Shown here: piece after piece, positions 1 to 20,950 of the stretch
Numbering within the stretch: the stretch's first letter is position 1
How the letters are laid out: each line of letters starts with the position of its first letter
NCBI RefSeq assembly: GCF_963853765.1
Contig: NC_088854.1
Location: 46,128,001-46,192,000, forward strand
DNA from: Magallana gigas
Taxonomy: Eukaryota
Reading direction: 5' to 3'
Length of the DNA: 64,000 nt
Notes under the pieces: generated by a model
The model's input: the letters and a program-made list of their open reading frames with translations, nothing else
Databases searched by the model: none
What the model was told of the DNA's origin: nothing
Program-made: the position numbers and the translations under genes

Positions 1-1505
1 TGTCTACACACTGCCATACCCACTTTTATCTAAAAGCAGCATGGTAACACAGGACAGCCCAAATGATATCAGCATGTAATGGAGCTCAGATCTGCTCTGA
101 CAACCATAAATCTTGCTTTGATGATAAGAAATGTAAAAGAAACAACTGGGATGCAACTTCATTCTGTGATGTATGTAACATTCTATCTGTAGAGCAAAAG
201 TAGCCATGAAATTTCAATTGGACACACTTAATTATACCCCTCATCAGGCCATCCCTATAGAATTTGAAGAGAATTACTGATCAATGATGATTGACACATG
301 TTAGATAATTTACAGCAAGAGCAATAAGCATATACATGTAGTAATTCAATAAGGCAATGCATTTCTGATGCATATTTACAAGAGAAATCACATAAGTGCA
401 TGCCATATCACAATACTGAAAAAAGAATCATACCAACCCCCCTAGTTGTGGATAAGGGTGGGGCATCTATATTGTACCCATACATGTTACATGATATGAT
501 TTCATTCAAATTTTGATTTTCATTACTTAGAATAGGACAGGTGTGCTGAGGTTACCATATAAAAAATAGTAATATCTCCTTCTAAACATTTTAACAATGA
601 CTAATGTTTCAATATCTTAGGTCATTCAAACATAAATATCAGTATTTGTATTTTGTAAATAAGGAACTCCCCTTAAAATGTGGGAAGAAACTGATTTTCT
701 GGCTATAATGCATAAAAACATTTTCTGGTAAACTGAAATTCATCAGTTTTTAAGGATGAAAACCATGAAAAGCTCCTAGATTCAATCATGATGATATTAT
801 ATATACTTGACTCATAATGACCTTCTCAACTAAATGCATGAAACCTCTTTTCTACACAAAATATGCATCTGTGTGATCTTGTAAATGGTGTTAAAGCATG
901 TTTTTGCCTTAAACTATTACAAATGGGTAATTCAGTGTAAAATAAACATAAACATAGCACATATTTGCCCAAATCCCTTAATTCCTTCAATCAGGACTAT
1001 GTAGGAAATGAAATTAAAACTCACATAAGGTGAGCAGAAATCAAAGAAATTAAAGTTTTTGTCAAAATAATCCTTCGATAGACTGTTCATGTTCTTCTTC
1101 GCAATGTTTCGCACTTGTCGCTTAATTCTGAGACTTGCACGTAAACTCAAAATTGGTCATTCGATGAAAAACTAGTCGCTGCGTGCTCTTACGACAAAGT
1201 CTGAGGGCATCAAATATGACTGCGACAACTGATCTGCACACTTTTACAGCATCTAGAACACAGAAACCAATATTCTAAGCTCCAGTGACTACAAATCATC
1301 CATTTTTAAAGGTTTTTATTATTATATATTAAAAATTACATGTTTTCCACACCAAAAATCATCATTTTTCATATTTTTTTCATTACAAAATTTTAAAAGC
1401 ATTTTTCTATCTTCAGACTACAGAAACTAATTTCTGTTAACAAGATTTGACATAAAATACTGAAAACTGGCACCTGCATGCATTTTTTCAATTTGACACA
1501 CAGCC

Positions 1506-1977
1506 CTTCAAGGTATCACACCGGTAATTGTTTTCACTATATAACACTATAGAGGGGAAAAAATTCTTAAAAATCAGTTTGTATTTTTCATGACAAAATA
1601 TTCGGAGGAAATGTTATTTGTTACCTATCTCATCAGCTAACACCATAAAAAGGGCAAGCGATACTGCATTTTCTCAAAATATCTAGCTCCAAACAGGTCT
1701 ACCCTCAAAACCACGTGTTTTCCATTTGTATGTAAACAGACTGCACACTCCCCAGGAAGCTGCTGCATGAGCCCTGAAAGAAGTAGTTCCTGTGAAAAAA
1801 AATCATCACCTAACAAAATACATGAAATATCCTACTCAGTGGTACAAAAAATTTTAAAACTGAGTAAAGGAAAATGTAAAAATGCAGTCAAGGAAAAAAA
1901 TAATTCTGAAGTATATATGGAACTACAATTGACTAAGTTCATTTTGATTGGCCGATTACCGGTGTGATACCTTGAAG
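1506..1977. mobile_element. 472-bp MITE-like element, copy 1
   Basis: Perfect 23-bp TIR: CTTCAAGGTATCACACCGGTAAT (1506-1528) and ATTACCGGTGTGATACCTTGAAG (1955-1977). No transposase ORF and no clear target-site duplication (TSD). Confidence 0.8.
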
Positions 1978-3919
1978 AGACTCTAAAGATGTCAGATCCC
2001 TTTCAAATTTGCACCTGAGAATTCCCAATCAACTGTCACCAAATCCCTAAAACCCTGTCCCCAAGCTCCCAATATTTCATTAGCTATTGAGGATTTATCT
2101 CCCTTACTCAGACTGAAGAAAATAGCACAGATGAAACACATTTGGAGCCTCACACCATGCATGACCTGAAGCCAATTTTCATCCTTAAAACAACAAGATA
2201 CAAAATCATCTTGGTACCAAATCAGAGCATATACATTTTTCTTTACATCAAAATAAAAATATTCCATTAGAGTCACTTCATTATGCAATCATTGCATAAC
2301 AAAGAAGAAATTTACCTCTATTGTTCACACATTTCATAACAATATTGTGAATTATCAGGTCAAAAATGAAATCTGTATCTGGTAAATTTATATATCAGGT
2401 AAAGCCTGTTTACTTGTCTACACACTGCCATACCCACTTTTATCTAAAAGCAGCATGGTAACACAGGACAGCCCAAATGATATCAGCATGTAATGGAGCT
2501 CAGATCTGCTCTGACAACCATAAATCTTGCTTTGATGATAAGAAATGTAAAAGAAACAACTGGGATGCAACTTCATTCTGTGATGTATGTAACATTCTAT
2601 CTGTAGAGCAAAAGTAGCCATGAAATTTCAATTGGACACACTTAATTATACCCCTCATCAGGCCATCCCTATAGAATTTGAAGAGAATTACTGATCAATG
2701 ATGATTGACACATGTTAGATAATTTACAGCAAGAGCAATAAGCATATACATGTAGTAATTCAATAAGGCAATGCATTTCTGATGCATATTTACAAGAGAA
2801 ATCACATAAGTGCATGCCATATCACAATACTGAAAAAAGAATCATACCAACCCCCCTAGTTGTGGATAAGGGTGGGGCATCTATATTGTACCCATACATG
2901 TTACATGATATGATTTCATTCAAATTTTGATTTTCATTACTTAGAATAGGACAGGTGTGCTGAGGTTACCATATAAAAAATAGTAATATCTCCTTCTAAA
3001 CATTTTAACAATGACTAATGTTTCAATATCTTAGGTCATTCAAACATAAATATCAGTATTTGTATTTTGTAAATAAGGAACTCCCCTTAAAATGTGGGAA
3101 GAAACTGATTTTCTGGCTATAATGCATAAAAACATTTTCTGGTAAACTGAAATTCATCAGTTTTTAAGGATGAAAACCATGAAAAGCTCCTAGATTCAAT
3201 CATGATGATATTATATATACTTGACTCATAATGACCTTCTCAACTAAATGCATGAAACCTCTTTTCTACACAAAATATGCATCTGTGTGATCTTGTAAAT
3301 GGTGTTAAAGCATGTTTTTGCCTTAAACTATTACAAATGGGTAATTCAGTGTAAAATAAACATAAACATAGCACATATTTGCCCAAATCCCTTAATTCCT
3401 TCAATCAGGACTATGTAGGAAATGAAATTAAAACTCACATAAGGTGAGCAGAAATCAAAGAAATTAAAGTTTTTGTCAAAATAATCCTTCGATAGACTGT
3501 TCATGTTCTTCTTCGCAATGTTTCGCACTTGTCGCTTAATTCTGAGACTTGCACGTAAACTCAAAATTGGTCATTCGATGAAAAACTAGTCGCTGCGTGC
3601 TCTTACGACAAAGTCTGAGGGCATCAAATATGACTGCGACAACTGATCTGCACACTTTTACAGCATCTAGAACACAGAAACCAATATTCTAAGCTCCAGT
3701 GACTACAAATCATCCATTTTTAAAGGTTTTTATTATTATATATTAAAAATTACATGTTTTCCACACCAAAAATCATCATTTTTCATATTTTTTTCATTAC
3801 AAAATTTTAAAAGCATTTTTCTATCTTCAGACTACAGAAACTAATTTCTGTTAACAAGATTTGACATAAAATACTGAAAACTGGCACCTGCATGCATTTT
3901 TTCAATTTGACACACAGCC

Positions 3920-4391
3920 CTTCAAGGTATCACACCGGTAATTGTTTTCACTATATAACACTATAGAGGGGAAAAAATTCTTAAAAATCAGTTTGTATTT
4001 TTCATGACAAAATATTCGGAGGAAATGTTATTTGTTACCTATCTCATCAGCTAACACCATAAAAAGGGCAAGCGATACTGCATTTTCTCAAAATATCTAG
4101 CTCCAAACAGGTCTACCCTCAAAACCACGTGTTTTCCATTTGTATGTAAACAGACTGCACACTCCCCAGGAAGCTGCTGCATGAGCCCTGAAAGAAGTAG
4201 TTCCTGTGAAAAAAAATCATCACCTAACAAAATACATGAAATATCCTACTCAGTGGTACAAAAAATTTTAAAACTGAGTAAAGGAAAATGTAAAAATGCA
4301 GTCAAGGAAAAAAATAATTCTGAAGTATATATGGAACTACAATTGACTAAGTTCATTTTGATTGGCCGATTACCGGTGTGATACCTTGAAG
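3920..4391. mobile_element. 472-bp MITE-like element, copy 2
   Basis: Same TIR pair at +2414. Confidence 0.8.
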
Positions 4392-6333
4392 AGACTCTAA
4401 AGATGTCAGATCCCTTTCAAATTTGCACCTGAGAATTCCCAATCAACTGTCACCAAATCCCTAAAACCCTGTCCCCAAGCTCCCAATATTTCATTAGCTA
4501 TTGAGGATTTATCTCCCTTACTCAGACTGAAGAAAATAGCACAGATGAAACACATTTGGAGCCTCACACCATGCATGACCTGAAGCCAATTTTCATCCTT
4601 AAAACAACAAGATACAAAATCATCTTGGTACCAAATCAGAGCATATACATTTTTCTTTACATCAAAATAAAAATATTCCATTAGAGTCACTTCATTATGC
4701 AATCATTGCATAACAAAGAAGAAATTTACCTCTATTGTTCACACATTTCATAACAATATTGTGAATTATCAGGTCAAAAATGAAATCTGTATCTGGTAAA
4801 TTTATATATCAGGTAAAGCCTGTTTACTTGTCTACACACTGCCATACCCACTTTTATCTAAAAGCAGCATGGTAACACAGGACAGCCCAAATGATATCAG
4901 CATGTAATGGAGCTCAGATCTGCTCTGACAACCATAAATCTTGCTTTGATGATAAGAAATGTAAAAGAAACAACTGGGATGCAACTTCATTCTGTGATGT
5001 ATGTAACATTCTATCTGTAGAGCAAAAGTAGCCATGAAATTTCAATTGGACACACTTAATTATACCCCTCATCAGGCCATCCCTATAGAATTTGAAGAGA
5101 ATTACTGATCAATGATGATTGACACATGTTAGATAATTTACAGCAAGAGCAATAAGCATATACATGTAGTAATTCAATAAGGCAATGCATTTCTGATGCA
5201 TATTTACAAGAGAAATCACATAAGTGCATGCCATATCACAATACTGAAAAAAGAATCATACCAACCCCCCTAGTTGTGGATAAGGGTGGGGCATCTATAT
5301 TGTACCCATACATGTTACATGATATGATTTCATTCAAATTTTGATTTTCATTACTTAGAATAGGACAGGTGTGCTGAGGTTACCATATAAAAAATAGTAA
5401 TATCTCCTTCTAAACATTTTAACAATGACTAATGTTTCAATATCTTAGGTCATTCAAACATAAATATCAGTATTTGTATTTTGTAAATAAGGAACTCCCC
5501 TTAAAATGTGGGAAGAAACTGATTTTCTGGCTATAATGCATAAAAACATTTTCTGGTAAACTGAAATTCATCAGTTTTTAAGGATGAAAACCATGAAAAG
5601 CTCCTAGATTCAATCATGATGATATTATATATACTTGACTCATAATGACCTTCTCAACTAAATGCATGAAACCTCTTTTCTACACAAAATATGCATCTGT
5701 GTGATCTTGTAAATGGTGTTAAAGCATGTTTTTGCCTTAAACTATTACAAATGGGTAATTCAGTGTAAAATAAACATAAACATAGCACATATTTGCCCAA
5801 ATCCCTTAATTCCTTCAATCAGGACTATGTAGGAAATGAAATTAAAACTCACATAAGGTGAGCAGAAATCAAAGAAATTAAAGTTTTTGTCAAAATAATC
5901 CTTCGATAGACTGTTCATGTTCTTCTTCGCAATGTTTCGCACTTGTCGCTTAATTCTGAGACTTGCACGTAAACTCAAAATTGGTCATTCGATGAAAAAC
6001 TAGTCGCTGCGTGCTCTTACGACAAAGTCTGAGGGCATCAAATATGACTGCGACAACTGATCTGCACACTTTTACAGCATCTAGAACACAGAAACCAATA
6101 TTCTAAGCTCCAGTGACTACAAATCATCCATTTTTAAAGGTTTTTATTATTATATATTAAAAATTACATGTTTTCCACACCAAAAATCATCATTTTTCAT
6201 ATTTTTTTCATTACAAAATTTTAAAAGCATTTTTCTATCTTCAGACTACAGAAACTAATTTCTGTTAACAAGATTTGACATAAAATACTGAAAACTGGCA
6301 CCTGCATGCATTTTTTCAATTTGACACACAGCC

Positions 6334-6805
6334 CTTCAAGGTATCACACCGGTAATTGTTTTCACTATATAACACTATAGAGGGGAAAAAATTCTTAAAA
6401 ATCAGTTTGTATTTTTCATGACAAAATATTCGGAGGAAATGTTATTTGTTACCTATCTCATCAGCTAACACCATAAAAAGGGCAAGCGATACTGCATTTT
6501 CTCAAAATATCTAGCTCCAAACAGGTCTACCCTCAAAACCACGTGTTTTCCATTTGTATGTAAACAGACTGCACACTCCCCAGGAAGCTGCTGCATGAGC
6601 CCTGAAAGAAGTAGTTCCTGTGAAAAAAAATCATCACCTAACAAAATACATGAAATATCCTACTCAGTGGTACAAAAAATTTTAAAACTGAGTAAAGGAA
6701 AATGTAAAAATGCAGTCAAGGAAAAAAATAATTCTGAAGTATATATGGAACTACAATTGACTAAGTTCATTTTGATTGGCCGATTACCGGTGTGATACCT
6801 TGAAG
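6334..6805. mobile_element. 472-bp MITE-like element, copy 3
   Basis: Same TIR pair at +4828. Confidence 0.8.
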
Positions 6806-8747
6806 AGACTCTAAAGATGTCAGATCCCTTTCAAATTTGCACCTGAGAATTCCCAATCAACTGTCACCAAATCCCTAAAACCCTGTCCCCAAGCTCCCAA
6901 TATTTCATTAGCTATTGAGGATTTATCTCCCTTACTCAGACTGAAGAAAATAGCACAGATGAAACACATTTGGAGCCTCACACCATGCATGACCTGAAGC
7001 CAATTTTCATCCTTAAAACAACAAGATACAAAATCATCTTGGTACCAAATCAGAGCATATACATTTTTCTTTACATCAAAATAAAAATATTCCATTAGAG
7101 TCACTTCATTATGCAATCATTGCATAACAAAGAAGAAATTTACCTCTATTGTTCACACATTTCATAACAATATTGTGAATTATCAGGTCAAAAATGAAAT
7201 CTGTATCTGGTAAATTTATATATCAGGTAAAGCCTGTTTACTTGTCTACACACTGCCATACCCACTTTTATCTAAAAGCAGCATGGTAACACAGGACAGC
7301 CCAAATGATATCAGCATGTAATGGAGCTCAGATCTGCTCTGACAACCATAAATCTTGCTTTGATGATAAGAAATGTAAAAGAAACAACTGGGATGCAACT
7401 TCATTCTGTGATGTATGTAACATTCTATCTGTAGAGCAAAAGTAGCCATGAAATTTCAATTGGACACACTTAATTATACCCCTCATCAGGCCATCCCTAT
7501 AGAATTTGAAGAGAATTACTGATCAATGATGATTGACACATGTTAGATAATTTACAGCAAGAGCAATAAGCATATACATGTAGTAATTCAATAAGGCAAT
7601 GCATTTCTGATGCATATTTACAAGAGAAATCACATAAGTGCATGCCATATCACAATACTGAAAAAAGAATCATACCAACCCCCCTAGTTGTGGATAAGGG
7701 TGGGGCATCTATATTGTACCCATACATGTTACATGATATGATTTCATTCAAATTTTGATTTTCATTACTTAGAATAGGACAGGTGTGCTGAGGTTACCAT
7801 ATAAAAAATAGTAATATCTCCTTCTAAACATTTTAACAATGACTAATGTTTCAATATCTTAGGTCATTCAAACATAAATATCAGTATTTGTATTTTGTAA
7901 ATAAGGAACTCCCCTTAAAATGTGGGAAGAAACTGATTTTCTGGCTATAATGCATAAAAACATTTTCTGGTAAACTGAAATTCATCAGTTTTTAAGGATG
8001 AAAACCATGAAAAGCTCCTAGATTCAATCATGATGATATTATATATACTTGACTCATAATGACCTTCTCAACTAAATGCATGAAACCTCTTTTCTACACA
8101 AAATATGCATCTGTGTGATCTTGTAAATGGTGTTAAAGCATGTTTTTGCCTTAAACTATTACAAATGGGTAATTCAGTGTAAAATAAACATAAACATAGC
8201 ACATATTTGCCCAAATCCCTTAATTCCTTCAATCAGGACTATGTAGGAAATGAAATTAAAACTCACATAAGGTGAGCAGAAATCAAAGAAATTAAAGTTT
8301 TTGTCAAAATAATCCTTCGATAGACTGTTCATGTTCTTCTTCGCAATGTTTCGCACTTGTCGCTTAATTCTGAGACTTGCACGTAAACTCAAAATTGGTC
8401 ATTCGATGAAAAACTAGTCGCTGCGTGCTCTTACGACAAAGTCTGAGGGCATCAAATATGACTGCGACAACTGATCTGCACACTTTTACAGCATCTAGAA
8501 CACAGAAACCAATATTCTAAGCTCCAGTGACTACAAATCATCCATTTTTAAAGGTTTTTATTATTATATATTAAAAATTACATGTTTTCCACACCAAAAA
8601 TCATCATTTTTCATATTTTTTTCATTACAAAATTTTAAAAGCATTTTTCTATCTTCAGACTACAGAAACTAATTTCTGTTAACAAGATTTGACATAAAAT
8701 ACTGAAAACTGGCACCTGCATGCATTTTTTCAATTTGACACACAGCC

Positions 8748-9219
8748 CTTCAAGGTATCACACCGGTAATTGTTTTCACTATATAACACTATAGAGGGGA
8801 AAAAATTCTTAAAAATCAGTTTGTATTTTTCATGACAAAATATTCGGAGGAAATGTTATTTGTTACCTATCTCATCAGCTAACACCATAAAAAGGGCAAG
8901 CGATACTGCATTTTCTCAAAATATCTAGCTCCAAACAGGTCTACCCTCAAAACCACGTGTTTTCCATTTGTATGTAAACAGACTGCACACTCCCCAGGAA
9001 GCTGCTGCATGAGCCCTGAAAGAAGTAGTTCCTGTGAAAAAAAATCATCACCTAACAAAATACATGAAATATCCTACTCAGTGGTACAAAAAATTTTAAA
9101 ACTGAGTAAAGGAAAATGTAAAAATGCAGTCAAGGAAAAAAATAATTCTGAAGTATATATGGAACTACAATTGACTAAGTTCATTTTGATTGGCCGATTA
9201 CCGGTGTGATACCTTGAAG
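8748..9219. mobile_element. 472-bp MITE-like element, copy 4 (terminates the array)
   Basis: Same TIR pair at +7242. Its right flank (TTCTTCGGG) differs from that of the internal copies (AGACTCT). Confidence 0.8.
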
Positions 9220-9240
9220 TTCTTCGGGCGTTTAAATGCA

Positions 9241-9243
<3 letters not shown>

Positions 9244-9325
<82 letters not shown>
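9244..9325. repeat. (AT)n microsatellite, about 41 units
   Basis: Uninterrupted AT dinucleotide run. Confidence 0.99.
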
Positions 9326-9328
<3 letters not shown>

Positions 9329-9854
9329 TTCACAACTGACAATCGCTGTTTGCTTACAAAAATATGTTTACTAAATTGTGGCAGAAACGTATATACATTG
9401 TATAAATGTCCCTGGTACTGATATTATTGTGTAATGATCTTGATTAAATTTGGAACAAAAGTTCGCGAATTTTATCCACAGAGCATCGGGTTCAACTCAT
9501 CAGTCTGTCGGAACTAGGAACAATGCCCTTAAACAACACATATTTAATGTGTGTTTTATTGACAAATAAATCCAACCCCGCCCGATCGCGTAATGGACGT
9601 TAGAGGTTCGCCGTTATTAAAGAGCTGCTGAACAGATGCCGTGTGCCTTTACCTGTTTAAAAAGACATTTTATTTTTAAAACAATAAACACTTGATAAAC
9701 AAAAACCAAATAGCTATGCCGAGATTTTAAACGCCGATAACACACGAAAATTAGAAGAAGGAATAAATACACATTCATTTTGGCGCGATGCTATTCTTGC
9801 CGTCTGTTGAGCAGTAGCTTACCCATAGTGACGTGTAGCATCCTTGCTGGAGTT

Positions 9855-10021
9855 ATGGAGACGGTAATTTCTATAGATCGACGCCTGACCCAGCGGGTCC
9901 AAGGGGGCCCCAAGGATTTAACCCCGAAGATGTGTGTGATGGACAGCTACAGGAACCAGGGGTCGCGCTGCCGGACAGAGCCCTACCTTCCTACGATCAT
10001 TTTACCTGTTGGAAAAGCCAG
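9855..10021 (+). CDS. Candidate first coding exon of CNBD gene 1 (METVISIDRRLTQ...PVGKA, phase-2 donor)
   Basis: ATG at 9855 and an open frame to a strong AG|GTGAGT donor. Phase 2 matches the acceptors at 11845, 13057 and 15682. Confidence 0.5.
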
Positions 10022-11374
10022 GTGAGTAGAATATTACCTTTGTAGGGCCTTGGTTGTTATTCTGCGGTAGTTACTTTCTATTTTATGAAAGTACATCTCT
10101 TTAAACATCGAGATCAAAAGTATGTGAAAGAGAAATGTTTTTGATATTTGTGAAAGGTTTGTGTAGATGTATTGATTATTTATTATCAGATGTACAAAAC
10201 TTCTGGTAAAAGTCGCAAGTACTTGTAAATCGAATCGAACTTTCAAAACATTTCGTAAGAAATAAATGATTTAGATATGAAAACCCCCAGGAGAAACATT
10301 TTTTTCACACTTCATTTGTATATTAATACTGCTAGACATCCATTTTCTTATCGTTGAAATATTGCTATTACGTTTAATAATTGATTGATATTGCTGATAA
10401 AACATCTTTGATGAAAAGTACTTATTTCACCAATACACACCATGCATCGAAAATCAAAGAATATAGGTGAGAATGAATATGAATTTTTTCATTGTGAGCA
10501 GAACTCCAGCAACTTGAAGAAAATGAATCAAATATACAGTAATAAAGAGATTCGCTCAAATATTGTCTATAAATAGTTGTACGCAATGACGTACATTCGA
10601 ACGTTGCAAATTGAATTGTGGTGTTGATGAATACAATTTTTAAAAACTGGAGGAAAGAGGATTGTGTTAAATGCAGTTGTTAAATTGTGCACATTGTCAA
10701 TGTTGTCGTTATACAGCACAGTCGATTTGCATAGCGCATGTACATTTTAACGCGTGGACAATGTGCACCTATTGACGGCTATCAAGAGACAAGGTTGTGA
10801 TAGCTGCACGGCGAGTGCGAAGAGCGATACTGGTCCAAATTTAAAAACCCTTAACGCTGGATAATAAAATCTTCTTATCGTTCACCATCATTTTGTCTTG
10901 CATACATTTACATTAATTTTGTGGAACCTCATAGCGATGCTTGTTGACCAAAGACTTGTTCCCATTCCACACGCTGATCACCAATGTTATATTATTTCAA
11001 ATCCATTTGTTAAAGTAACAAACAAATCTACGGAACACAACAATCCTGACACCCACACACTGCATAGTTGATTTCAAACACGGACAGCCAAACCAATTTA
11101 AATCAGCATTAGATTTTTGTTGGACAAAATAATTGGATCATTCAAAGTTCAAAATTGAAATTAATGTCAAAAGATTCGAAAATTGAATATTGAGTGAGCC
11201 ACCTGTGGCGTATTTTAATGAAACCTTGGCTTGTAAGATTGAGACAGTGACCAAAAACACATATATTAATATCACCGATATCTTTTTTTCACTGCTAGTA
11301 TTACTAGTATCATAAAAATGAATGACTGCTGTTAATTTTCTCTGAAGACACCGAAACACGTATTAGTATTAGAA

Positions 11375-11402
11375 ATAACCATGAAACGGTTGCTTTGGCA
11401 AT
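11375..11402. promoter_or_regulatory. Paired RFX X-box-like motifs
   Basis: ATAACCATGAAAC (11375-11387) next to GTTGCTTTGGCAAT (11389-11402, 11/14 match to GTTGCCATGGCAAC), upstream of a CNBD2-like gene. Confidence 0.45.
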
Positions 11403-11844
11403 GCTATGGGATGGGATGAGGATATAATGACTTTGTTGACGCTTTTTGTTATATTTATAAAACGCTTTTATCGTTAGAATTCAATCTGTCGTGTTGGATG
11501 TCATTTACAGACCAATTATAACGCGGTTACAGAGCGAGCTAGTCGTAAAAAAGCTACATTTACTCACCTTGTTCAACCAGCTGTGATGGGAAGCCGCTGG
11601 GTAGCGGATGTTCATAAAAGGAAGACCGTGTTGCAACGTTAGCTTCAGAACAAAAATCAGTTTTGCACACTACAGGGAAAAAACATCCATGAACGGAGAA
11701 GACGCCAAAGATTGGTACAGAGGCACACAAGATTAATTTCGGTTACTCTTTCGTCTGCATGATGAGTACTGATGACCAAAGCTTAGATGTAAGCTTTTTG
11801 TATATAATTATAAATGTGGATTTCATTTTGCCATGTTTTGGTAG

Positions 11845-12001
11845 GTGCGACACGGCGGATTCTGTGTGGACCACCAAAGATCAGAGAAGCGAAGACCGAG
11901 TTTGTTCGGACAATAAGGATGTTGAGAGGCGAGGAAATCGAGAACCGCTCGACTGCCTCAAAGTAGCCAAGTTCAAAAGACGGAGACATTTCTTTCACAG
12001 A
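11845..12001 (+). CDS. Candidate alternative exon A of CNBD gene 1 (phase 2 to 0)
   Basis: TTTTGGTAG acceptor, open frame CDTADSV...KFKRRRHFFHR, AGA|GTGAGT donor, 157 bp. Confidence 0.45.
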
Positions 12002-13056
12002 GTGAGTACAACCTTAGGCTTGTTGTCTGTTTAATTTTTTAATCAACTCTAGCTTGGAATAGAACTTTCCATCTTTCCTGTTTTTTGTTTAGTTTGGTTT
12101 TTTTGTGTTTTGCATCCGCTCGAGATTATTTTCTGAATTTGAGAACTCTGGGTAGAGAAATTAATGCACGTTTGTGAATGAGGCCAATTTGGCCTGTGAA
12201 TCCAGTACAAAAAAATATTTGACAAAAGTAGAATGTCGGTTATTGATGGATTAAAATGCCATAAATTTCAGAGCTGAACATTTAACTGGTACAATGCCTT
12301 CCGCATTTAGTACCTCAGCATGAATTAATTTAGATGTCTATGATTAGATCGAATGCTGCGATATTAGATGTTTCTTTCCATTTTTCTTTCAATGCGAAGT
12401 AGTATGTTAAAAAATAAATCAATTTAATTTCATTTTCAGAATATGAATGCAATTTCGTTATATAAAATCAAATAAATTTCGACACCAAATCCAGTTCTGG
12501 CACTTGCAATGAGATATGTGTTTTTTAATTATGTGCCTTAGTTCAGTCAAGTACATTAGAAATGACGGAAGAGGGCTTTTGAGAAGAGGAGCGCGTTGCC
12601 TTTAATGGTAACCCAGAATTAAATCTTTTATCCCTTTGCCGCTTTTAAGCAAAATGTTTTGATTTGATACACATTAAAATCTACATAATTCAACTTTTGG
12701 CGACACAGTGAATTATCAATGGCTTTGTAGGTATTTTACATCATTATCAGTAAGACCTTTGTCAACTTGCAATAATAGAAAACACCAACTGTCAGCGAGA
12801 GAAGTGACAGAGGAAGCCCCCTACAAGTTTGAGTGGACCCTGCGGTGCTCACTGGGACCTAAAATCGTGTCTCTGGCTATCTCCTCACTGTCATGCTGAA
12901 CTCTGACAATCCGGGTACTTTTGGAATGTACAAAAGTAATTACTAATATTATTTCAACGGTAGTATTTCGTAGCCATTCTGTGAAACGATTTAAAATATC
13001 AACGTGGTTGAAGGTCTCATACTGCGAAAAAAAACACATTTGAACCTGATTGTTAG

Positions 13057-13381
13057 AAGAACAAACATTGGAGTGAGCAAGACCCGAGATAAAGCAATGA
13101 AGAAAAAGTTTTTACGAAGCCGGACTTTTGCTTCTAACCAACCAAAAACAAGCTTGATGAAAAAAAGAACTAAAACTGATATTGAAAATATAAGGATACA
13201 CAGAGAGAAGTCGGAGCCGTTGATTTCTAGTCCAAAATCGCCATTTCTTCAATTCCATGCATGGAATACAGTCCACTCTCGGAGGTCTGTTAGAAACAGC
13301 CCAAGTATTAGAAGGAAAGAAGATGAAAGCGCTGGGGCTTCCGACGAAACGTTTATGACGGAAAAGCCAAAATATGTGGAG
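13057..13381 (+). CDS. Candidate alternative exon B of CNBD gene 1 (phase 2 to 0)
   Basis: TGTTAG acceptor, 108 open Lys/Arg/Ser-rich codons, GAG|GTAATA donor, 325 bp. Confidence 0.55.
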
Positions 13382-13674
13382 GTAATAAAACAGTAGCTGA
13401 TAAAGTAGTTAAACTCTTCAAAATCGATAAACGTTAATTAGATAGATTCTAACAAATGAAATTGCGAACGATCAAACGGCTGTGTACCGTTCATCTCAGT
13501 GCTGTTAACTGTGGAGGATGCAAAGTAATTAGGATTTTAAAACAAGTTTGCTTGATTCCTATCTCTCAATGCCAAGTAATGAGTAAAGAGTACAAAGTCT
13601 TTGCAAGGGACTTTAAATAACCAAAAAATTATTTTAATTCTTTTGTGGCGTGTACTAATAATTGTTGCCTCTAT

Positions 13675-13688
13675 GTTGCCATGGTATA
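13675..13688. promoter_or_regulatory. RFX X-box-like motif
   Basis: GTTGCCATGGTATA, 11/14 match to the X-box palindrome. Confidence 0.3.
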
Positions 13689-15681
13689 CATGTACCTTTT
13701 ATATTGTACGGACATAAAAAATGCAGGAGTTATTATCATTTATAAGTTGACTCGTCTTTGCAATCAGTTGATTCGGATGTAGACAGGGTAGTACGACCCT
13801 TTGTCCTCCTTCAGAATCGAAGAACAATATCAACATATTTCAGAACTTAAATTTGAAATGTTTACTAAAGCTTTATTCAGGGCTCTTCATCCAAAGGAGA
13901 TTAATACAGTCTAATAATGACCCCGACCATTCAGCCCTAATTGGTCATTGAAATTGAAACCAATTATCAATATACCGTTCCTTAATTGCGTGGTACGTAC
14001 GTTCTATATTAATAATTCCTCGGAAAACACTGGTGGAAGGTGGCAAACGTTTAATCAAAGTTCTTGATCTAATGGATTTCATACATACATTCTTAAACAA
14101 TTTTGACTAATGATTACTCATATCTACACATGTAAGTGATGCGGATGATTAAAATTTAGAATTTTCTTGTATTTATCACATGCCATATTGTATAAACTGT
14201 AGAAGGCATAGGACTAATATTATTGGAATATTTAAGCATTTAACATTTCATCGTTCATAGCGGAAAGTCTTGGATTTAATAAAGTGCCGAAGCAATCGTT
14301 CTAGTAATCGAATGTTGACGATCTTCTAGATTATTGATAATACCTCTTGATATCTGTTACTAACAATCTGTTTATAAGTTTGATAATGGGAAGGAAGATT
14401 GGTCACCTTGAATTACAGTTTATTTGACACAATAAAACGTAAATCCCATGAACAGAATGAAGACTGACATCCCCCATTATGCGACAGCCTGGAGCTACCC
14501 CCAAGACAACGAATGCTTGATCAACAAAATGTTTTAATGCAGAATGAATTGCAACCTCGTAAACACCTAGTTATGCAACTGATATATTTATTTACCTCTT
14601 AGATAAATATTTCACGGGTTCTTCCACAAGAAATTCCTTTTATCTTGGAGACGAGAAAAATGCAATGACCAGCACGACAATGTGCAGGAGTAATGATAAC
14701 TGTGTGTGATAGTTACTCATTGCCACTCCTCCTCTAAGACAGAAAGGAAAATTAATCTCCTTGTTTTTTCTCCCATGGGACGGTATCAAGCTTAAAAGCG
14801 ATCGATTGAGCTTATACTTTATGTAATAGCAATGCCTCCTTTAGGCACCCACAACCTCAGAACTGACAGGGGTAACTACGCATTCAACAAAATTATCTTG
14901 AATACCCGATGCCCCAGGAATGAATGACGCTATGGGATGAATGTAGCATTAATATAAGAAAATCTATCGATAATTGTGTTAGTTTTATGTATGGGAGGCG
15001 ATTAAGTCACGGATCTGGACGGGTTCCGTCAGCGGTTCACAAAATCAGTAATAAATCTTGTAACACTTGGCGATTATTTAAATGTCGCTCAGATATATCT
15101 TGTCATGCGAATTGATTTAGATTTCCTAATAAATTACACAAATACCAATAATCACCCAAAAATTCGCCAGGAGTATGGATGTTGGACACCTAGTTAAAGA
15201 TTTACAGTCTCTGGTTACGGAGTTACACACAAAATAAATGGAGGCTGTTGAGCTCATCAGGAAAAGAGCCCATTCAAACGAGGAGAGGACCCTGAATTAA
15301 TCTTCGAGATGAACAACTGAAATTACACCGATGTGAGAATAAACACAGTCAACAAGGCTGGAGAAGAAGTCGCCACTTTTGTGAAGGCCACAACTGACTA
15401 AGAATTTGGACCAAATTTCGGAGATATAGCTGTAATTCTCCGTTGCCGAGGAGGTTTGGGTGACAATAAATACATATCTGCTCAATAAAACGAATTTTTC
15501 ATTTCGGGATTATTAGGAGACATGAAGATAACAACAGTTTTAATCAAGTTCTCTTTGTTGGACTTTCCCGTATTTGCCGATACCATGCAGAATTGATTTT
15601 GAAGTTTACTCACTCAATTGTGGGAGATAAGTGAGTTGATATTTTGTGGAACTGAAGTGCATCTCTAACGTATAATTGCAG

Positions 15682-16255
15682 ATTGTCATTGTTCAAACAT
15701 AATTATCCATTGTCTAACAATAAAATACCAATACTGACCGAGATGATTCCAACTCGAAAATTAATTGAAACAGCAAATGATGACGCCAGATTTTATAGGC
15801 GACGCTCGGACGCGCAGTTCGGAAGAAAATTCAGTGATGGTAACATTCTGTACTACGATTCAAAATTTAAAAAACGAACGTCATCTTTTTCGGACTATCC
15901 AAGAAGACTAAGTGTCAAATCAGACCAAGGCTTCCGGAAATTTAGCAGTGGCAGCATTGACGTGTTTTACCAAAGCAGACGATATAGTCGCGATGACGTC
16001 ATGGAGGCACCAGGATTTACAAAAAGTAAAGTTTACCCAATAACCGAGAGGAAAATATTAGAAAACGTGGATAGGCTTTATTTGTCGAAATCAAAACTGA
16101 TGAAGACTCGTTCAACAAACAACATCAACTTACCGCCATTGAATTTACGTTTACCAAAAACAACTCGTAAACCACAGAAACCCAATGGAAAGTCCCTGCG
16201 GAGGGTTAGGTCGGAAAATTATGTCATCCCACTTCCGTTTAAGAACAAGATTTTG
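15682..16255 (+). CDS. Candidate alternative exon C of CNBD gene 1 (phase 2 to 0)
   Basis: TTGCAG acceptor, 191 open codons in AT-rich DNA, TTG|GTAAGT donor, 574 bp. Confidence 0.65.
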
Positions 16256-17844
16256 GTAAGTTTGTATGGATTGTTTTTTTAGTAATAAAATGAGGCTTTG
16301 ACAATCAAAAAACATTACGATGTACAATCTGAGTCAGTGACTTTAGTATGGCAATGAACATCTACAGATGCATGCATGTGTTATTATGTGCATTTTACAT
16401 GCACTGTATGAGTGTAAATACAAGGTTACATCGAAAACATATCGTAAATTTTGTATTTTACACCCACCCAAAAAAATTTACAGTATGACATATATTTGTA
16501 AATTCCATGTGTCAAACTTAACAGGAATTTATCGTTATCAAATATTTTCATCAGCTTGAATAAAATGTCCATAACAGAAATTTATGCCTAATTTTATACT
16601 GTATATTTTGTTTTAATGCTTAACATTTTCCCATAAGGACTTTGAAAGACGTTTATAAAATGAACTGTAATGCTCGTGGTTGTGATAATTATCATCTATA
16701 AAATTCACCTCTATGCACTTTACGGTAAAAAAGTAAATGTTAAAAAAATGTAAAAAAAAAAAAAAAAAATTAAAAAAATAAATGTTAAATGTGTATGCAA
16801 AGAGGATGTGATATACATGATTCCCTAGCAGAAATATATGACAGTCATGTATTAAATCAATTTTTTTTGGATGTTTTCACCATTGCGGTTATTAAATTTT
16901 ATATGAAAAAGCAAAACAAACAAAAGCCTTACAGACGTAAAGGTTACATGCGCCTGACGTTGTAACTTTTTCTTTAAATTAAATATATTTATCCCCTAAA
17001 CCTAATAACACACCCTTTATAACGCCAGGTGCCTGAGCTACAGGTATATGTAGTAAACTGTATAGTTTTACATTGCTGTGTACTATTATGTATACAATAC
17101 TAGGGTACTTGTACTTTGTGTCTGCAAATTTTCACGTTTGTTGTGCCGTGTACAAGTTCTTTTCCATGGCCGGTCTGTTGTTTTATTTCCTTCTGTTGAC
17201 AGAGCACTCAATGTCTCTGTTACAAAACAACCTTATATTTCAATCACTGCAGGTTTCGGGTGTCATAAATCTCTCCTGCACTTTTAACGTAAGACAGTGA
17301 ATTACTTACGGTTATGAAAAGTCAGACAGATAGCTAATAAATACAAGAATTATTGTGGTTTTCATAAATTATCATGATCATTTCCATTATTTTGATCCCA
17401 ACGATTTGCACACAAAGAAATATTTCTTGAAAGACGATTTGCTTTCATTATTTACGAACCCCTTTGTATTTGATTTCTCCCGTTTAAAGATTGTATGAAG
17501 ATTTACTGTGCCTTAATGAAATAATGAAACTGTTTAATGGGGGTATTATAAGTGATTTCTGACTTTATTACGAGATGACAGGAGGGATATGTTTACACAG
17601 CTATAAAGACTTATGAATGGGGCATGGAGACAAAAGTACCTCCATTACTGAAGATCACAATTAAATCGACCGATTATTAGTGTTTAGTTTACTGTAGAGA
17701 TTCAAGTACCCGAGGCTCCTAACCGCCGACAATGGTTTAACTTTCACCATAGAGAAACCTTTGTACTAAAACCAGTCACAGAAGCTATTCGTTTCACTAA
17801 AATAATTTTGAGTCACAAGAAGTTGGGAACAGACAGGAAGAAAC

Positions 17845-18111
17845 ATGGACATACAGCAAAAGAATTCTATTAATTATCAAAAAGAAAAGACGGAAAAAAG
17901 TAATTTGCGAAGAAAAAGCAAAGAAATGCGACCTGATGCTTCCAATGGTGCCATCGTGTCTTCCAAGCCGAAACGAGGCTTGGCGCGAATTGCCAGGAGA
18001 AAAAGATGGGAACGAGTCTGTAGTCGAATATTAATGTGTAGAGTGTTCCTCTCTCCGAGTCTGAAGATTGCATCCAATGACCATGAGAGGGTTTCTAGAT
18101 TTACCGTTAGT
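17845..18111 (+). CDS. Candidate alternative first exon D of CNBD gene 1 (MDIQQKN...RRKRWERVCSRILMCRVF...FTVS, phase-0 donor)
   Basis: ATG plus 89 open codons and an AGT|GTGAGT donor. Confidence 0.55.
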
Positions 18112-20204
18112 GTGAGTAAATTCTTCATTTTTCCCATGGGAAGAATCCGATCTCTTGCCTATTCGTATAATTTATGTTTGTAGAAAGTTATTCACAGCTT
18201 TAGATCTCTGTTTAGAGTTATGTACATTCGTATGATGGAGTTGACAAGTGATATACCTTTGGAGTGCAGGTAAATTTATCGTTTTCTCCCCTCATCCCCC
18301 CAAAAAGGGAAAAGAGCTTTCGATAAGATAACGGAAGTCGCCTCTCCACGGCTTCAAAGCATTCCTGTGATCCAGGGTCAATGCAGATTACCTGTACATG
18401 AATTGTGTTTACCTGTTTTAATTTTCTAAGCAAAATCTCGTCTTGTCATGTGGCTTCCACGTTGAATTTATCATATCTGCGCTTTCAATCACAATAGCGT
18501 TGTCATTTTGGAACAATGTCGAAATTGAAAGGCGTTGATCTGGTAGAAACGCTTTGTTTGCACTGACCCCACCAGATAACAGAGTTTATATGATGTGATC
18601 AGACTAAACAGAAACAAGGCAAATGTCACCCTCTTTACCTGATTCATATTCCCCGCGCCCAGCCACCATGCCCTGCTGCTTTCTACATCAGAAGGTAAGA
18701 CCAGGGTTTTTCTGCTGCATAGAAATTTTGACAATTACGTGATGTATTTCAAACGAAGTTTAAAAAAAGATGAGAGTATTAAAACAGCGAGATCAAAAGA
18801 AGCAATTGATTCAGTCGTCTCTAAAGAATTGATTCTTTTTTCTTTACAATCGGTCTTGATTTTTCATATGCTTTTTTATTTTAATTTCAATTTCTTTTGT
18901 AAAAGGGAAAGAGTATCAAATGCAATACTTTATCTGTTTTTTTTTATTAGATTATTTTTCTTTCAGTTTCTTGTATTTTCATTTGCTTTGCCTCGCTTGT
19001 TAATTTTTTTATATTCCCCTATTTTGGAGAAAATGGTAAATAATGAATAAAGCTTAATGCTGGAACAGTTAATCAAAATCTGATGTGTAATTGCTGTTGT
19101 GTATTTTAATATTTCAAATTTAATATACTGCCAAGGTAAAAGTACCAATGCTGTCAGCAAAATATGGTAAAATTTGTCGTCGATAAAATCAATTTTTAAA
19201 TATTAAAAGCCCTATAGCAAGGTCTGCAATAGACATGTCGTGTATCATATTTCAATTTACTGCAAGGATGTCATCAATATTAGGTTAACTAGACAAAAGT
19301 TTCCCTCTTAAAGTTTGTGGTGTTTATCATAAACATTTTGGAATATTCTGCCTCAATAAGATCATAAATATTGAGGAAATGATTAGATTTCTTTTACAAT
19401 ACAATGTACCTTATACTTAACGGGCGACGTTATATGCTTACAAAATGTTACACTTTGTGTTTTGTAACGAACGTGCATAGGCCCACAGCACATAAAATTG
19501 AAGTTGTAAATCACACACAAGTTGACCAACTTCATATCTATTTACTTAGTTGCAAATTTTGGGTCGCACGCTTCAACGTTTAACATAATTAAAAAGTTGA
19601 AGAAGTAGCATATTGCTGTCGGTGTAATTCGATAAATATCATATTCATCAAAGAATTTTGCTGTTATGTGTTATTTTAGTTTGGTGGTCTTCTTGCATTC
19701 ATTGGGCTTAGCTACTGAGAAGCCCAGCGATAATTTGTATAGCCTACTAGATTCATTGGAGTAATTGTGGGCTTTGAAATGAAATGTCAATATAGCAAAG
19801 AATATTCATTGAATAGTGAAATAGAATAAATCTATTTCATTTATCCAATTTTGTAAAAAAGACTAAGGCTTCTTTTTTTGTATAGAAGCTAGTTACGAGA
19901 GATACTACTGGGCAACTTTGATAGATAGTAGTCAGTCTCCATGGAAGGCTGTCGGAGAAAGAATAGACCAAAGCACTAGTGGAATATTAATATTTGAAGT
20001 TTTCTACACACACAAACACCCTGTTACCGCACCTGTCGACTTTAATTTTGCTGGACACAAAAACTTATTTTGATAATGGAGTTAAAAGGTTCTTTAGTGT
20101 TTTGTCAAGCTTAAAAACATCTGGTGTCTTTACGTTGGTGAGTAACGCTGAGTGAGGTTTTTGCATGGAGGAACTCTTAGACGTTGAAAAGAAAGGGATT
20201 AATC

Positions 20205-20624
20205 ATGGATCTGTTCGAACGAATTTTATCATCTCCCAAGGACTACCCAATCCCTCCCCTCAAAATAAAAGAAAAAATCAACAACATGTACACAGCATAC
20301 AGTCTTGATGGTTCATCCGGACCGATGGATCACAACTTCCTAAAGGAGCCCGAAGAGAACCACTCGGCCGTAAAAAGGAGATACAGGAAGCGTAACTATA
20401 TAGCATCTCCAAATTTGCGGAAACCTAGGCTTGAACCAATACGGTTCTTTCATATTCCTGAGAATTTGCAGTGGATATATGATAGGGCGAAAGAAAAGCA
20501 GTCGGTGAAAGATGCTCTAAGAAAGCGGCGATTTAAGAGGAAAAAAGAGAAAACGATAGAGACAGTCGTAATACAAGTGATAGAGATTCCAGAACCCGAC
20601 TTAACTCCCAGAAATGTTGTTGAG
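20205..20624 (+). CDS. Candidate alternative first exon E of CNBD gene 1 (MDLFERILSS...TPRNVVE, phase-0 donor)
   Basis: ATG plus 140 open codons and a GAG|GTAAAG donor, in frame with the exon at 20951. A phase-0 acceptor at 20181 is also possible. Confidence 0.65.
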
Positions 20625-20950
20625 GTAAAGAAAGAAGGAATGGTGTTAGTACTAGGACACTTCATGTAGAAAGCATAATTAGTGTACGATTTTTTTCCCA
20701 GTAGAAGGCTGTTGTACAAACCGAGGTACAAGATTATGGTACAAACTGTGATACTGAATGTTGTACAAACTGTGTACGAGTGGAACAAACTTTAGTAAGA
20801 CTTGTACAAACTCTAGTACATTGCACGAGATTGGTGTACAAATTGTATTACGAGAAACAAGTTGCAGTACGAGGCTGTTGTAAAATTCGTAACAATTGTT
20901 ATTCTATTTTTGGTTCGTTAGATAATTGTATTTTTTTTATTTGCTTGCAG

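What the first reader, a model, noticed from the sequence alone, without database searches (positions are those of the whole stretch)
1..9219. 2.4-kb tandem array whose boundary is exactly a MITE terminus
Seen: each 2414-bp unit is 1942 bp of cargo plus a 472-bp TIR element. The copies look identical, and the array ends on the last TIR base (9219). Inference: the element defined the amplified unit. Options are unequal crossover between two MITE copies 2.4 kb apart, amplification of a composite MITE-cargo-MITE unit, or rolling-circle or circular-intermediate amplification from one element end. This would be a macrosatellite at birth, next to a gene promoter. An assembly expansion is a real alternative.
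Basis: partly seen in the sequence, partly recalled or inferred. Interest (0 to 1): 0.7.

Follow-up and report, generated by a model that had tools for sequence, protein, structure and literature searches.

The report
Known oyster KolobokP transposon multimer
The 2.4-kb tandem array is real, but it is a multimer of a published Pacific-oyster DNA transposon (KolobokP-N3_CGi, also catalogued as satellite CgiSat16) whose superfamily lineage is known to form such arrays, so it is an already described feature and not a new satellite being born.

Summary
Observation confirmed. Window 1-9219 has an exact 2414-bp period with no mismatch. The full array (C2:46115022-46137219, 22,198 bp) starts and ends with the TIR element.

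The interpretation needs re-filing. The "472-bp MITE" is the 460-bp long terminal direct repeat (LTDR; GG..CC termini, 17-bp TIR) of the non-autonomous transposon KolobokP-N3_CGi, plus 6 bp on each side. The "cargo" is that transposon's 1954-bp internal region (INT). Kojima & Bao 2022 described the LTDR-INT-LTDR architecture, solo LTDRs, (LTDR-INT)n-LTDR multimers and LTDR-less INT-INT joints. The 2414-bp period is also the published satellite CgiSat16, which belongs to a group shared by six oyster species.

The same unit forms arrays of up to about 98 kb at 10 or more other sites on 7 chromosomes. The family is therefore old and dispersed. This particular array is young: its 9 units are identical and share 4 private substitutions, so it grew in place from one founder unit.

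New details are small. All 27 LTDR-less joints in the genome are the same 7-nt scar in two mirror forms. CgiSat16 and KolobokP-N3 are the same sequence. Local copy number could not be checked with reads. Low interest.

The parts
1..1511 (-). INT (internal region) of KolobokP-N3_CGi, cut by the window start. This is the last 1511 of 1954 bp as read on the + strand.
   Evidence: Exact 2414-bp periodicity with the complete units downstream. The array continues upstream to C2:46115022.
1512..1971 (-). LTDR (460 bp, GG..CC, 17-bp TIR)
   Evidence: TIR core hits at 1512-1528 (+) and 1955-1971 (-). Identical to the LTDR at 8754-9213.
1972..3925 (-). INT, 1954 bp, non-coding
   Evidence: Periodicity. 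The longest ORF in a unit is 98 aa.
3926..4385 (-). LTDR
   Evidence: TIR core hits at 3926-3942 and 4369-4385.
4386..6339 (-). INT
   Evidence: Periodicity.
6340..6799 (-). LTDR
   Evidence: TIR core hits at 6340-6356 and 6783-6799.
6800..8753 (-). INT. It starts TTGAAG and ends CTTCAA on the + strand.
   Evidence: The reverse complement matches the published KolobokP-N3_CGi-I record: its first line, plus an exact internal 18-mer. It also matches the CgiSat16 consensus.
8754..9213 (-). Terminal LTDR of the multimer
   Evidence: The reverse complement matches the published KolobokP-N3_CGI-LTDR record, 460 bp. TIR core hits at 8754-8770 and 9197-9213.
9214..9219 (.). TTGAAG. These six bases beyond the LTDR end are identical to the first six bases of an INT. 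The periodicity ends here.
   Evidence: The mirror sequence TTCAA precedes the first LTDR at the left boundary.
9244..9325 (.). (AT)41 microsatellite, 25 bp beyond the array. It is not part of the element but it breaks every short-read contig.

Best explanation
Window 1-9219 is the right-hand part of a (LTDR-INT)9-LTDR multimer of KolobokP-N3_CGi. This is a non-autonomous, non-coding member of the KolobokP lineage of Kolobok cut-and-paste DNA transposons of the Pacific oyster. The same 2414-bp period has been catalogued as satellite DNA CgiSat16. Shown here: identity with both published sequences; the LTDR-INT-LTDR architecture; the dispersed family of solo LTDRs, monomers and multimers; and growth of this array in place from a single founder unit. 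Inferred: a founder copy (a monomer, or a solo LTDR that later received an INT) arrived by transposition. It was probably mobilised in trans by an autonomous relative such as KolobokP-5_CGi, whose LTDR starts with the same 24 bases (these include the 17-bp TIR). The array then expanded by unequal exchange between the 460-bp direct LTDRs. The family's His-Me nuclease may stimulate this exchange, as Kojima and Bao proposed. In other arrays single LTDRs are later cut out, leaving a fixed 7-nt scar.
For: Identity with CgiSat16: three diagnostic strings (both TIR arms and the cargo start) each occur once in Data S1 of the satellitome paper, inside the CgiSat16 consensus. That satellite is listed at 2414 bp, 66.8% AT, with a Repbase hit to DNA/Kolobok.

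Identity with KolobokP-N3_CGi: the published LTDR record (460 bp) reads as the reverse complement of window 8754-9213. The published -I record begins with the reverse complement of the cargo end plus TTCAA, and it contains an exact internal 18-mer from this unit. Table S1 gives 2872 bp, LTDR 460 and TIR 17; I compute 460+1954+460 = 2874.

Architecture, as described: termini are GG..CC. A monomer LTDR-INT-LTDR lies at C2:34.19 Mb. Solo LTDRs sit in many different flanks. Multimers are present on C1, C2, C6, C7, C8, C9 and C10.

Short direct repeats flank whole arrays: TGAA at C10, TCAA at C9, and TGTA at the C2:34 monomer.

LTDR-less INT-INT joints: all 27 have a 7-nt spacer, 18 CTTCAAG and 9 CTTGAAG. 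Each equals loss of the LTDR plus 5 bp from one INT tip or the other. This matches the paper's 'micro-deletion at either tip'.

Growth in place: the 9 units are identical and share 4 substitutions absent from the C9, C10 and C2:34 copies. Each of those loci has its own 4-7 private changes, and the INT copies recovered within each of C9 (2) and C10 (18) are identical.

Copy number: single INT contigs carry roughly 40-190 times (mostly about 100-170 times) the word depth of the single-copy flank in four independent samples.
Against: No clean target-site duplication flanks this particular array. The four bases next to GG..CC are TCAA on the left and TTGA on the right, which is an inverted pair, not a direct repeat. 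The paper also lists the TSD of this family as '?'.

An intact autonomous partner was not shown. The best His-Me nuclease hit near a KolobokP-5-type LTDR has two stop codons.

The exact copy number at this locus and the perfect identity of the units rest on the assembly alone. No contig crosses the (AT)41 tract and no long reads were available.

The match to the published consensus was made with short exact strings and by eye, because the supplement text could not be loaded into an aligner.
Confidence: 0.85

Rival explanations
1. Circle-mediated growth. A 2414-bp extrachromosomal circle (one LTDR plus one INT) is formed by LTDR-LTDR recombination or by a copy-out step. It re-integrates into an LTDR of the same array, or it is rolling-circle copied into a concatemer that integrates. 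This would add identical units without unequal crossover.
For: This is one of the three models in the KolobokP paper. It would give perfectly identical units. LTDR excision takes exactly 5 flanking bp with it, like the spacer in copy-out circle junctions that the paper discusses.
Against: No circle was observed. Mixed arrays with multi-unit registers (a 15,968-bp block repeated on C10) fit unequal exchange better than addition of single units. Private variants mean any circle must come from the same array, so this model is hard to tell apart from unequal exchange.
Confidence: 0.2
2. Assembly expansion. The locus holds one or a few units, and the assembler inflated or guessed the number of identical units.
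For: The units are 100% identical over 22 kb. Identical arrays cannot be sized without spanning reads. No spanning read could be examined.
Against: The same architecture recurs at 10 or more loci. Each locus has its own private variants, and some have internal landmarks in the form of LTDR-less units. INT contig depth is mostly about 100-170 times the flank depth in four independent samples, in line with the 122 or more copies the assembly holds. Read-clustering studies independently found this 2414-bp tandem repeat at 0.07% of the genome.
Confidence: 0.07
3. A ready-made multimer transposed here from another locus, using the outermost TIRs.
For: Any left and right TIR pair in a multimer could in principle be used. 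Whole arrays on C9 and C10 are flanked by 4-bp direct repeats.
Against: All 9 units carry 4 substitutions not seen in the C9, C10 or C2:34 copies. At two of these positions (7145 and 7413), none of the contigs laid from four other samples carries this array's letter. This array has no recognisable TSD.
Confidence: 0.08
4. An ordinary 1949-bp satellite into which an unrelated MITE inserted once. The MITE-bearing unit then spread by homogenisation, and the LTDR-less units are the ancestral state.
For: Units without the element exist on C6, C8 and C10.
Against: The empty joints come in two forms that are exactly the left or the right 7-mer of the occupied site, so at least one form must be derived by loss. 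Arrays begin and end with the element at every locus examined. A single LTDR-INT-LTDR copy exists. The LTDR-INT-LTDR unit is a named transposon family, and related families share the same architecture.
Confidence: 0.03

Closest known systems
KolobokP-N3_CGi (Kojima & Bao 2022, Mobile DNA 13:24, PMC9587614)
   Same: Same sequence: the LTDR and the internal region match the published records as reverse complements. Same sizes: LTDR 460 bp, TIR 17 bp, monomer 2872 versus 2874 bp. Same host species. The structure is the (LTDR-INT)n-LTDR multimer described for KolobokP.
   Different: Nothing essential differs. The paper counted only 78 LTDR and 7 internal copies in the fragmented oyster_v9 assembly, and it did not describe oyster multimers. 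Here the arrays reach about 98 kb, and each of the three arrays checked base by base is internally identical.
Satellite DNA CgiSat16, and its cross-species group OYS4 (Tunjic-Cvitanic et al. 2021, PMC8268682; 2024, PMC11136912)
   Same: The same 2414-bp monomer, including both LTDR/INT joints. AT content about 67%. Repbase hit to DNA/Kolobok. Scattered over most chromosomes.
   Different: Those papers treat it as a satellite and did not dissect the monomer. Only the 11 most abundant satellites were analysed structurally, and the 2024 text does not mention Kolobok.
KolobokP-5_CGi (autonomous, 4093 bp, LTDR 461 bp)
   Same: The first 24 bases of its LTDR (which include the 17-bp TIR) are identical to the LTDR here, and long stretches of the LTDR are similar by eye. 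Its internal region also appears to start with TTGAAG, judging from a flank that recurs at 7 loci.
   Different: It encodes a transposase and a His-Me nuclease, whereas the element here is non-coding. An intact copy was not demonstrated in this genome.
Bacterial composite transposons and IS26 translocatable units; tandem arrays of TRIM LTR retrotransposons
   Same: A segment bounded by two direct copies of a repeat that can itself move. Neighbouring units in an array share one repeat copy.
   Different: This is a eukaryotic cut-and-paste (DDD/E) element, so no reverse transcription is involved. The end repeat carries its own TIRs.

Membership tests
KolobokP (Kolobok superfamily) | LTDR-INT-LTDR architecture with direct terminal repeats of about 450 or about 660 bp | tested here: met
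   The LTDR is 460 bp. A monomer lies at C2:34.192-34.195 Mb. Multimers share one LTDR between neighbouring units.
KolobokP (Kolobok superfamily) | Each LTDR has its own short TIRs (11-18 bp), and the termini are 5'-RR..YY-3' | tested here: met
   A perfect 17-bp TIR (GGTATCACACCGGTAAT) with GG..CC termini.
KolobokP (Kolobok superfamily) | TSDs of 3-5 bp, TTAA-like for Kolobok, flanking solo LTDRs, monomers and multimers | tested here: inconclusive
   Direct 4-bp repeats next to GG..CC: TTAA and TTCA (solo copies), TGAA (C10 array), TCAA (C9 array), and TGTA offset by one base (C2:34 monomer). None is present at this locus (TCAA versus TTGA). About a third of ends carry TTCAA in inverted rather than direct orientation. 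The paper lists the TSD as '?' for this family.
KolobokP (Kolobok superfamily) | Solo LTDRs, multimers, and INT-INT joints with a micro-deletion at either INT tip | tested here: met
   90 ends outside array interiors, in many different flanks. Ten or more multimers. 27 of 27 joints show a 5-bp loss from one tip or the other.
KolobokP (Kolobok superfamily) | [quoted passage not shown] | tested here: not met
   The longest ORF in the unit is 98 aa. This is expected, because the family is listed as non-autonomous. PF05551 nuclease genes occur elsewhere in the genome.
KolobokP-N3_CGi (named family) | Sequence identity to the published LTDR and internal consensus | tested here: met
   Exact 17- and 18-nt strings from the LTDR and the INT fall inside the N3 LTDR and N3-I records. 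The first lines of both records read as the reverse complement of the window sequence. No full alignment was made.
Satellite DNA CgiSat16 | A 2414-bp monomer with the published consensus sequence, arranged in tandem | tested here: met
   The period is exactly 2414 bp. Three diagnostic strings each occur once in Data S1, within the CgiSat16 record, whose text shows both LTDR/INT joints.

The most novel reading that the evidence does not exclude
KolobokP-N3 arrays in living Pacific oysters may be turning over now through an enzyme-driven process, not through slow random crossover. Three observations point that way. Arrays of 11 to 42 kb are each internally identical yet differ from one another (a third, ~98-kb array was not checked base by base). 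This array's haplotype was not seen in contigs of four other samples. Every LTDR loss is the same exact LTDR-plus-5-bp excision, resolved to one of two mirror 7-mers. If this reading is right, the locus set would give a direct natural test of the proposed 'nuclease-induced unequal crossover' or circle-reintegration mechanisms, and of how a transposon becomes a satellite.
Probability: 0.3. Interest if true: 0.5.

Novelty: already known. Interest (0 to 1): 0.2.

Why it matters
The main value is correct filing. A striking "macrosatellite at birth" turns out to be a textbook multimer of a transposon lineage first described in this same species.

Two modest points go beyond the papers I read. First, satellite CgiSat16 and the transposon KolobokP-N3_CGi are the same sequence, and CgiSat13 appears to be KolobokP-4/4N1. 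Neither of the two satellite papers nor the transposon paper read here states this link. Second, a chromosome-level assembly shows how large (about 98 kb) these multimers are and how uniform the three checked base by base are, and how stereotyped LTDR excision is. This gives concrete loci for testing the published amplification models.

The array ends about 640 bp upstream of a region that another, unchecked note reads as alternative first exons of a cyclic-nucleotide-binding-domain gene. Copy-number variation here could therefore matter for that gene, but this was not tested.

Tried and rejected
Helitron/Helentron rolling-circle array: this was my first guess for an oyster tandem repeat. I rejected it because the unit has symmetric TIRs, GG..CC termini and TTAA-like flanks, and it matches a Kolobok family.

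LTR/TRIM retroelement: rejected. There is no TG..CA, and no primer-binding site or polypurine tract next to the repeats (by eye).

Tyrosine-recombinase core site at CTTSAAG: rejected, because the two copies are inverted rather than direct.

Coding or RNA content of the 'cargo': there is no ORF over 98 aa and no Rfam family.

I read the flanks through pattern searches with inner N positions instead. This lists only 13 nt per end and at most 100 places.

I could not define one consistent TSD rule for the family. At least two classes of flank appear.

The supplements of the 2024 satellitome paper are not held, so monomer lengths in other species are known only for C. hongkongensis (2421 bp).

All sequencing runs were available only as short-read contigs. 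Local copy number, the 9219/9220 junction and presence/absence polymorphism could not be tested.

No full alignment to the published consensus sequences was made, because that would have required typing long sequences.
Full report
**1. The observation**

Comparing the window with itself at an offset of 2414 bp gives no mismatch from position 1 to 6805. The first mismatch is 6806 versus 9220, and all neighbouring offsets give about 28% identity. A perfect 23-bp inverted repeat lies at 8748-8770 and 9197-9219. Its 17-nt core occurs 8 times in the window against 0.06 expected. An (AT)41 tract follows 25 bp after the array.

The window is C2:46128001-46192000 of a 564-Mb genome in 29 contigs. From overlapping loci I rebuilt the whole array, C2:46115022-46137219. 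It is 22,198 bp long, with 10 TIR elements and 9 'cargo' segments, and there is not one difference between units. It begins with a complete TIR element.

**2. It is not a local event**

The same 2414-bp unit is found in tandem on C1, C2, C6, C7, C8, C9 and C10. One array on C6 spans about 98 kb (39.255-39.353 Mb) and one on C10 spans 42 kb. Single element-cargo-element copies lie at C2:34.19 Mb and elsewhere.

The element's 5' end occurs 192 times with at most one mismatch. Ninety ends that are not array-internal sit in many different flanks, so the element is or was mobile on its own.

Some units in the C6, C8 and C10 arrays lack the element. There the two cargo copies are joined by a single 7-mer.

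**3. Identification**

The C. gigas satellitome paper lists CgiSat16 with a monomer of 2414 bp, 0.07% of the genome, 66.8% AT and a Repbase hit to DNA/Kolobok. Both TIR arms and the cargo start each occur once in its sequence file. They fall inside the CgiSat16 consensus, whose text shows both element/cargo joints as in the window. That paper dissected only its 11 most abundant satellites. A later paper places CgiSat16 in group OYS4, shared by six oyster species, with a 2421-bp monomer in C. hongkongensis.

Kojima & Bao 2022 describe KolobokP, a Kolobok lineage discovered in C. gigas. [quoted passage not shown] Each LTDR has its own 11-18 bp TIRs and RR..YY termini. The lineage also shows many solo LTDRs, (LTDR-INT)n-LTDR multimers usually flanked by TSDs of 3-5 bp, and occasional INT-INT joints with a small deletion at either INT tip.

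Their Table S1 lists the non-autonomous KolobokP-N3_CGi at 2872 bp, with LTDR 460, TIR 17 and TSD '?'. The published LTDR record reads as the reverse complement of window 8754-9213. The published internal record begins with the reverse complement of the cargo end plus TTCAA. Exact 18-mers from my LTDR and INT fall inside those two records.

With the LTDR defined as GG..CC (460 bp), the INT is TTGAAG + 1942 + CTTCAA = 1954 bp. The monomer is then 2874 bp and the period 2414 bp.

The 'MITE' is therefore the LTDR, the 'cargo' is the INT, and the array is a 9-unit multimer. The unit has no ORF above 98 aa and no Rfam match, as expected for a non-autonomous family.

**4. How this array arose**

All 9 units share four substitutions (cargo positions 340, 457, 608 and 855). 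These are absent from the C9, C10 and C2:34 copies. Those loci in turn carry 4, 7 and 5 private changes, and the INT copies recovered from C9 (2) and from C10 (18) are identical within each array. Each array therefore grew in place from one founder unit. Arrays were not copied from one another.

On C10 and C9 the whole array is flanked by a 4-bp direct repeat next to GG..CC (TGAA and TCAA), and the C2:34 monomer is flanked by TGTA. This fits arrival by transposition followed by local expansion.

The C10 array reads McMcMccMccMcMcMcMccMccMcMcMcMcMcM, where M is the element and c the cargo. It contains a 15,968-bp block that occurs twice. That is evidence for exchange in multi-unit register, as unequal crossover gives.

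These data fit the published model: unequal exchange between LTDRs, possibly induced by the family's nuclease. They do not exclude re-integration of LTDR+INT circles from the same array.

**5. LTDR loss**

A genome-wide pattern search allowing any spacer of 0-14 nt between INT end and INT start found 27 joints. All have exactly 7 nt, 18 CTTCAAG and 9 CTTGAAG, and the two forms are interleaved on C8. An occupied site reads CTTCAA-LTDR-TTGAAG. Each scar therefore equals removal of the LTDR plus exactly 5 bp from the right or the left INT tip. This is the oyster counterpart of the 'micro-deletion at either tip' and '1-5 flanking bp on one side' reported for clams. It shows that LTDR-less units are derived and not ancestral.

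**6. Reads**

Only short-read contigs were available. On one unit plus 2.8 kb of flank, contigs of four runs from four studies gave these word depths:

| Run | Flank contigs | Single INT contigs |
|---|---|---|
| X1 | 54-68 | 7204-9611 |
| X2 | 20-24 | 1137-3185 |
| X4 | 13-20 | 758-2523 |
| X5 | 20-26 | 2267-3794 |

That is mostly a 100- to 170-fold excess (the lowest single contigs give about 40- to 55-fold), in line with the 122 or more cargo candidates in the assembly. The high copy number is therefore real in independent samples.

Contigs break at the (AT)41 tract. The 9219/9220 junction, the local copy number and any empty allele could not be tested.

At 7145 and 7413, two of this array's private positions, every contig laid in all four runs carries the other letter. 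This hints that this haplotype is rare or private. Contigs drop rare variants, however, so it is only a hint.

**7. Possible autonomous partner**

KolobokP-5_CGi (4093 bp, LTDR 461 bp) starts with the same 24 bases, and its LTDR is visibly related. Seven exact KolobokP-5-type LTDR ends exist in this genome. The best His-Me nuclease match (PF05551) lies 3.2 kb from one of them at C1:58.05 Mb, but it contains two stop codons. Trans-mobilisation by this family is therefore an inference.

**8. What remains odd**

This array has no recognisable TSD. The five or six bases outside its outer LTDRs (TTCAA on the left, TTGAAG on the right) are the same as the INT tips that flank the internal LTDRs. About a third of the 90 listed ends, in at least 18 different contexts, also carry TTCAA next to GG in inverted rather than direct orientation. 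The paper could not assign a TSD to this family either, or to the two autonomous oyster families with 461-bp LTDRs.

In the C10 array the two higher-order blocks differ in scar type (C,C versus G,G). A simple block duplication does not explain this.

**9. Verdict**

It is wrong in claiming a new, locus-born macrosatellite with captured cargo. The feature is a known transposon family, also known as a satellite, in a form already described for its lineage. The scan has noted possible KolobokP solo LTDRs elsewhere in this genome. Interest is low. The small additions are the CgiSat16 = KolobokP-N3 equivalence, the size of the arrays (with the three checked base by base internally identical), and the invariant 7-nt excision scar.

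Noticed in passing
G000:C6:39255088-39352670: The largest array of the same family is about 98 kb. It has roughly 40 LTDRs and 15 LTDR-less joints (13 CTTCAAG, 2 CTTGAAG).
   Followed up: partly
G000:C7:48695123-48706518 and C4:3881472-3886075: His-Me nuclease (PF05551) hits with open 133-aa frames recur every ~3735 bp (four times on C7) and 4409 bp apart (twice on C4). They look like multimers of coding, possibly autonomous KolobokP families.
   Followed up: no
CgiSat13 record in Data S1 of PMC8268682 versus the KolobokP-4N1_CGi LTDR record: The other 2414-bp 'Kolobok' satellite, CgiSat13, contains a stretch that by eye matches the KolobokP-4/4N1_CGi LTDR (starting GGACACAGACCACAATT). Both long Kolobok-type satellites of the oyster satellitome therefore appear to be KolobokP multimers. 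None of the three papers read here (PMC8268682, PMC11136912, PMC9587614) makes this link.
   Followed up: partly
Flanks of LTDR ends genome-wide; window 9214-9219 and C2:46115023-46115027: TTCAA sits next to the GG terminus at about a third of non-internal ends, in at least 18 different contexts and in inverted orientation at the two ends. The effective TIR of this lineage may be 22 nt. This could explain why no TSD could be assigned to the oyster families with 460/461-bp LTDRs.
   Followed up: partly
G000:C10:12367522-12409580 (loci L001-L013, L025-L026, L043-L060): A 15,968-bp higher-order block (ccM ccM cM cM cM) occurs twice. Both LTDR-less scars are CTTCAAG in one block and CTTGAAG in the other. 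This is unexplained.
   Followed up: partly
Flank TTAGTTGTCTTCAA next to the LTDR at 7 loci (for example C1:58047240, C5:472316); flank GGAAGGGTTTTCAA at 5 loci (for example C2:48842396): Repeated flanks. The first is probably the start of the KolobokP-5_CGi internal region (it also begins TTGAAG). The second is another repeat or composite that was not identified.
   Followed up: no
window 9244-9325: A perfect (AT)41 microsatellite lies 25 bp from the array end. It breaks every short-read contig and so hides the junction in public short-read data.
   Followed up: yes
window 9855-21136: Another first-reader note proposes alternative first exons of a cyclic-nucleotide-binding-domain gene starting about 640 bp downstream of the array. 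I saw basic, serine-rich ORFs on the + strand (130, 199 and 161 aa) but did not test them.
   Followed up: no
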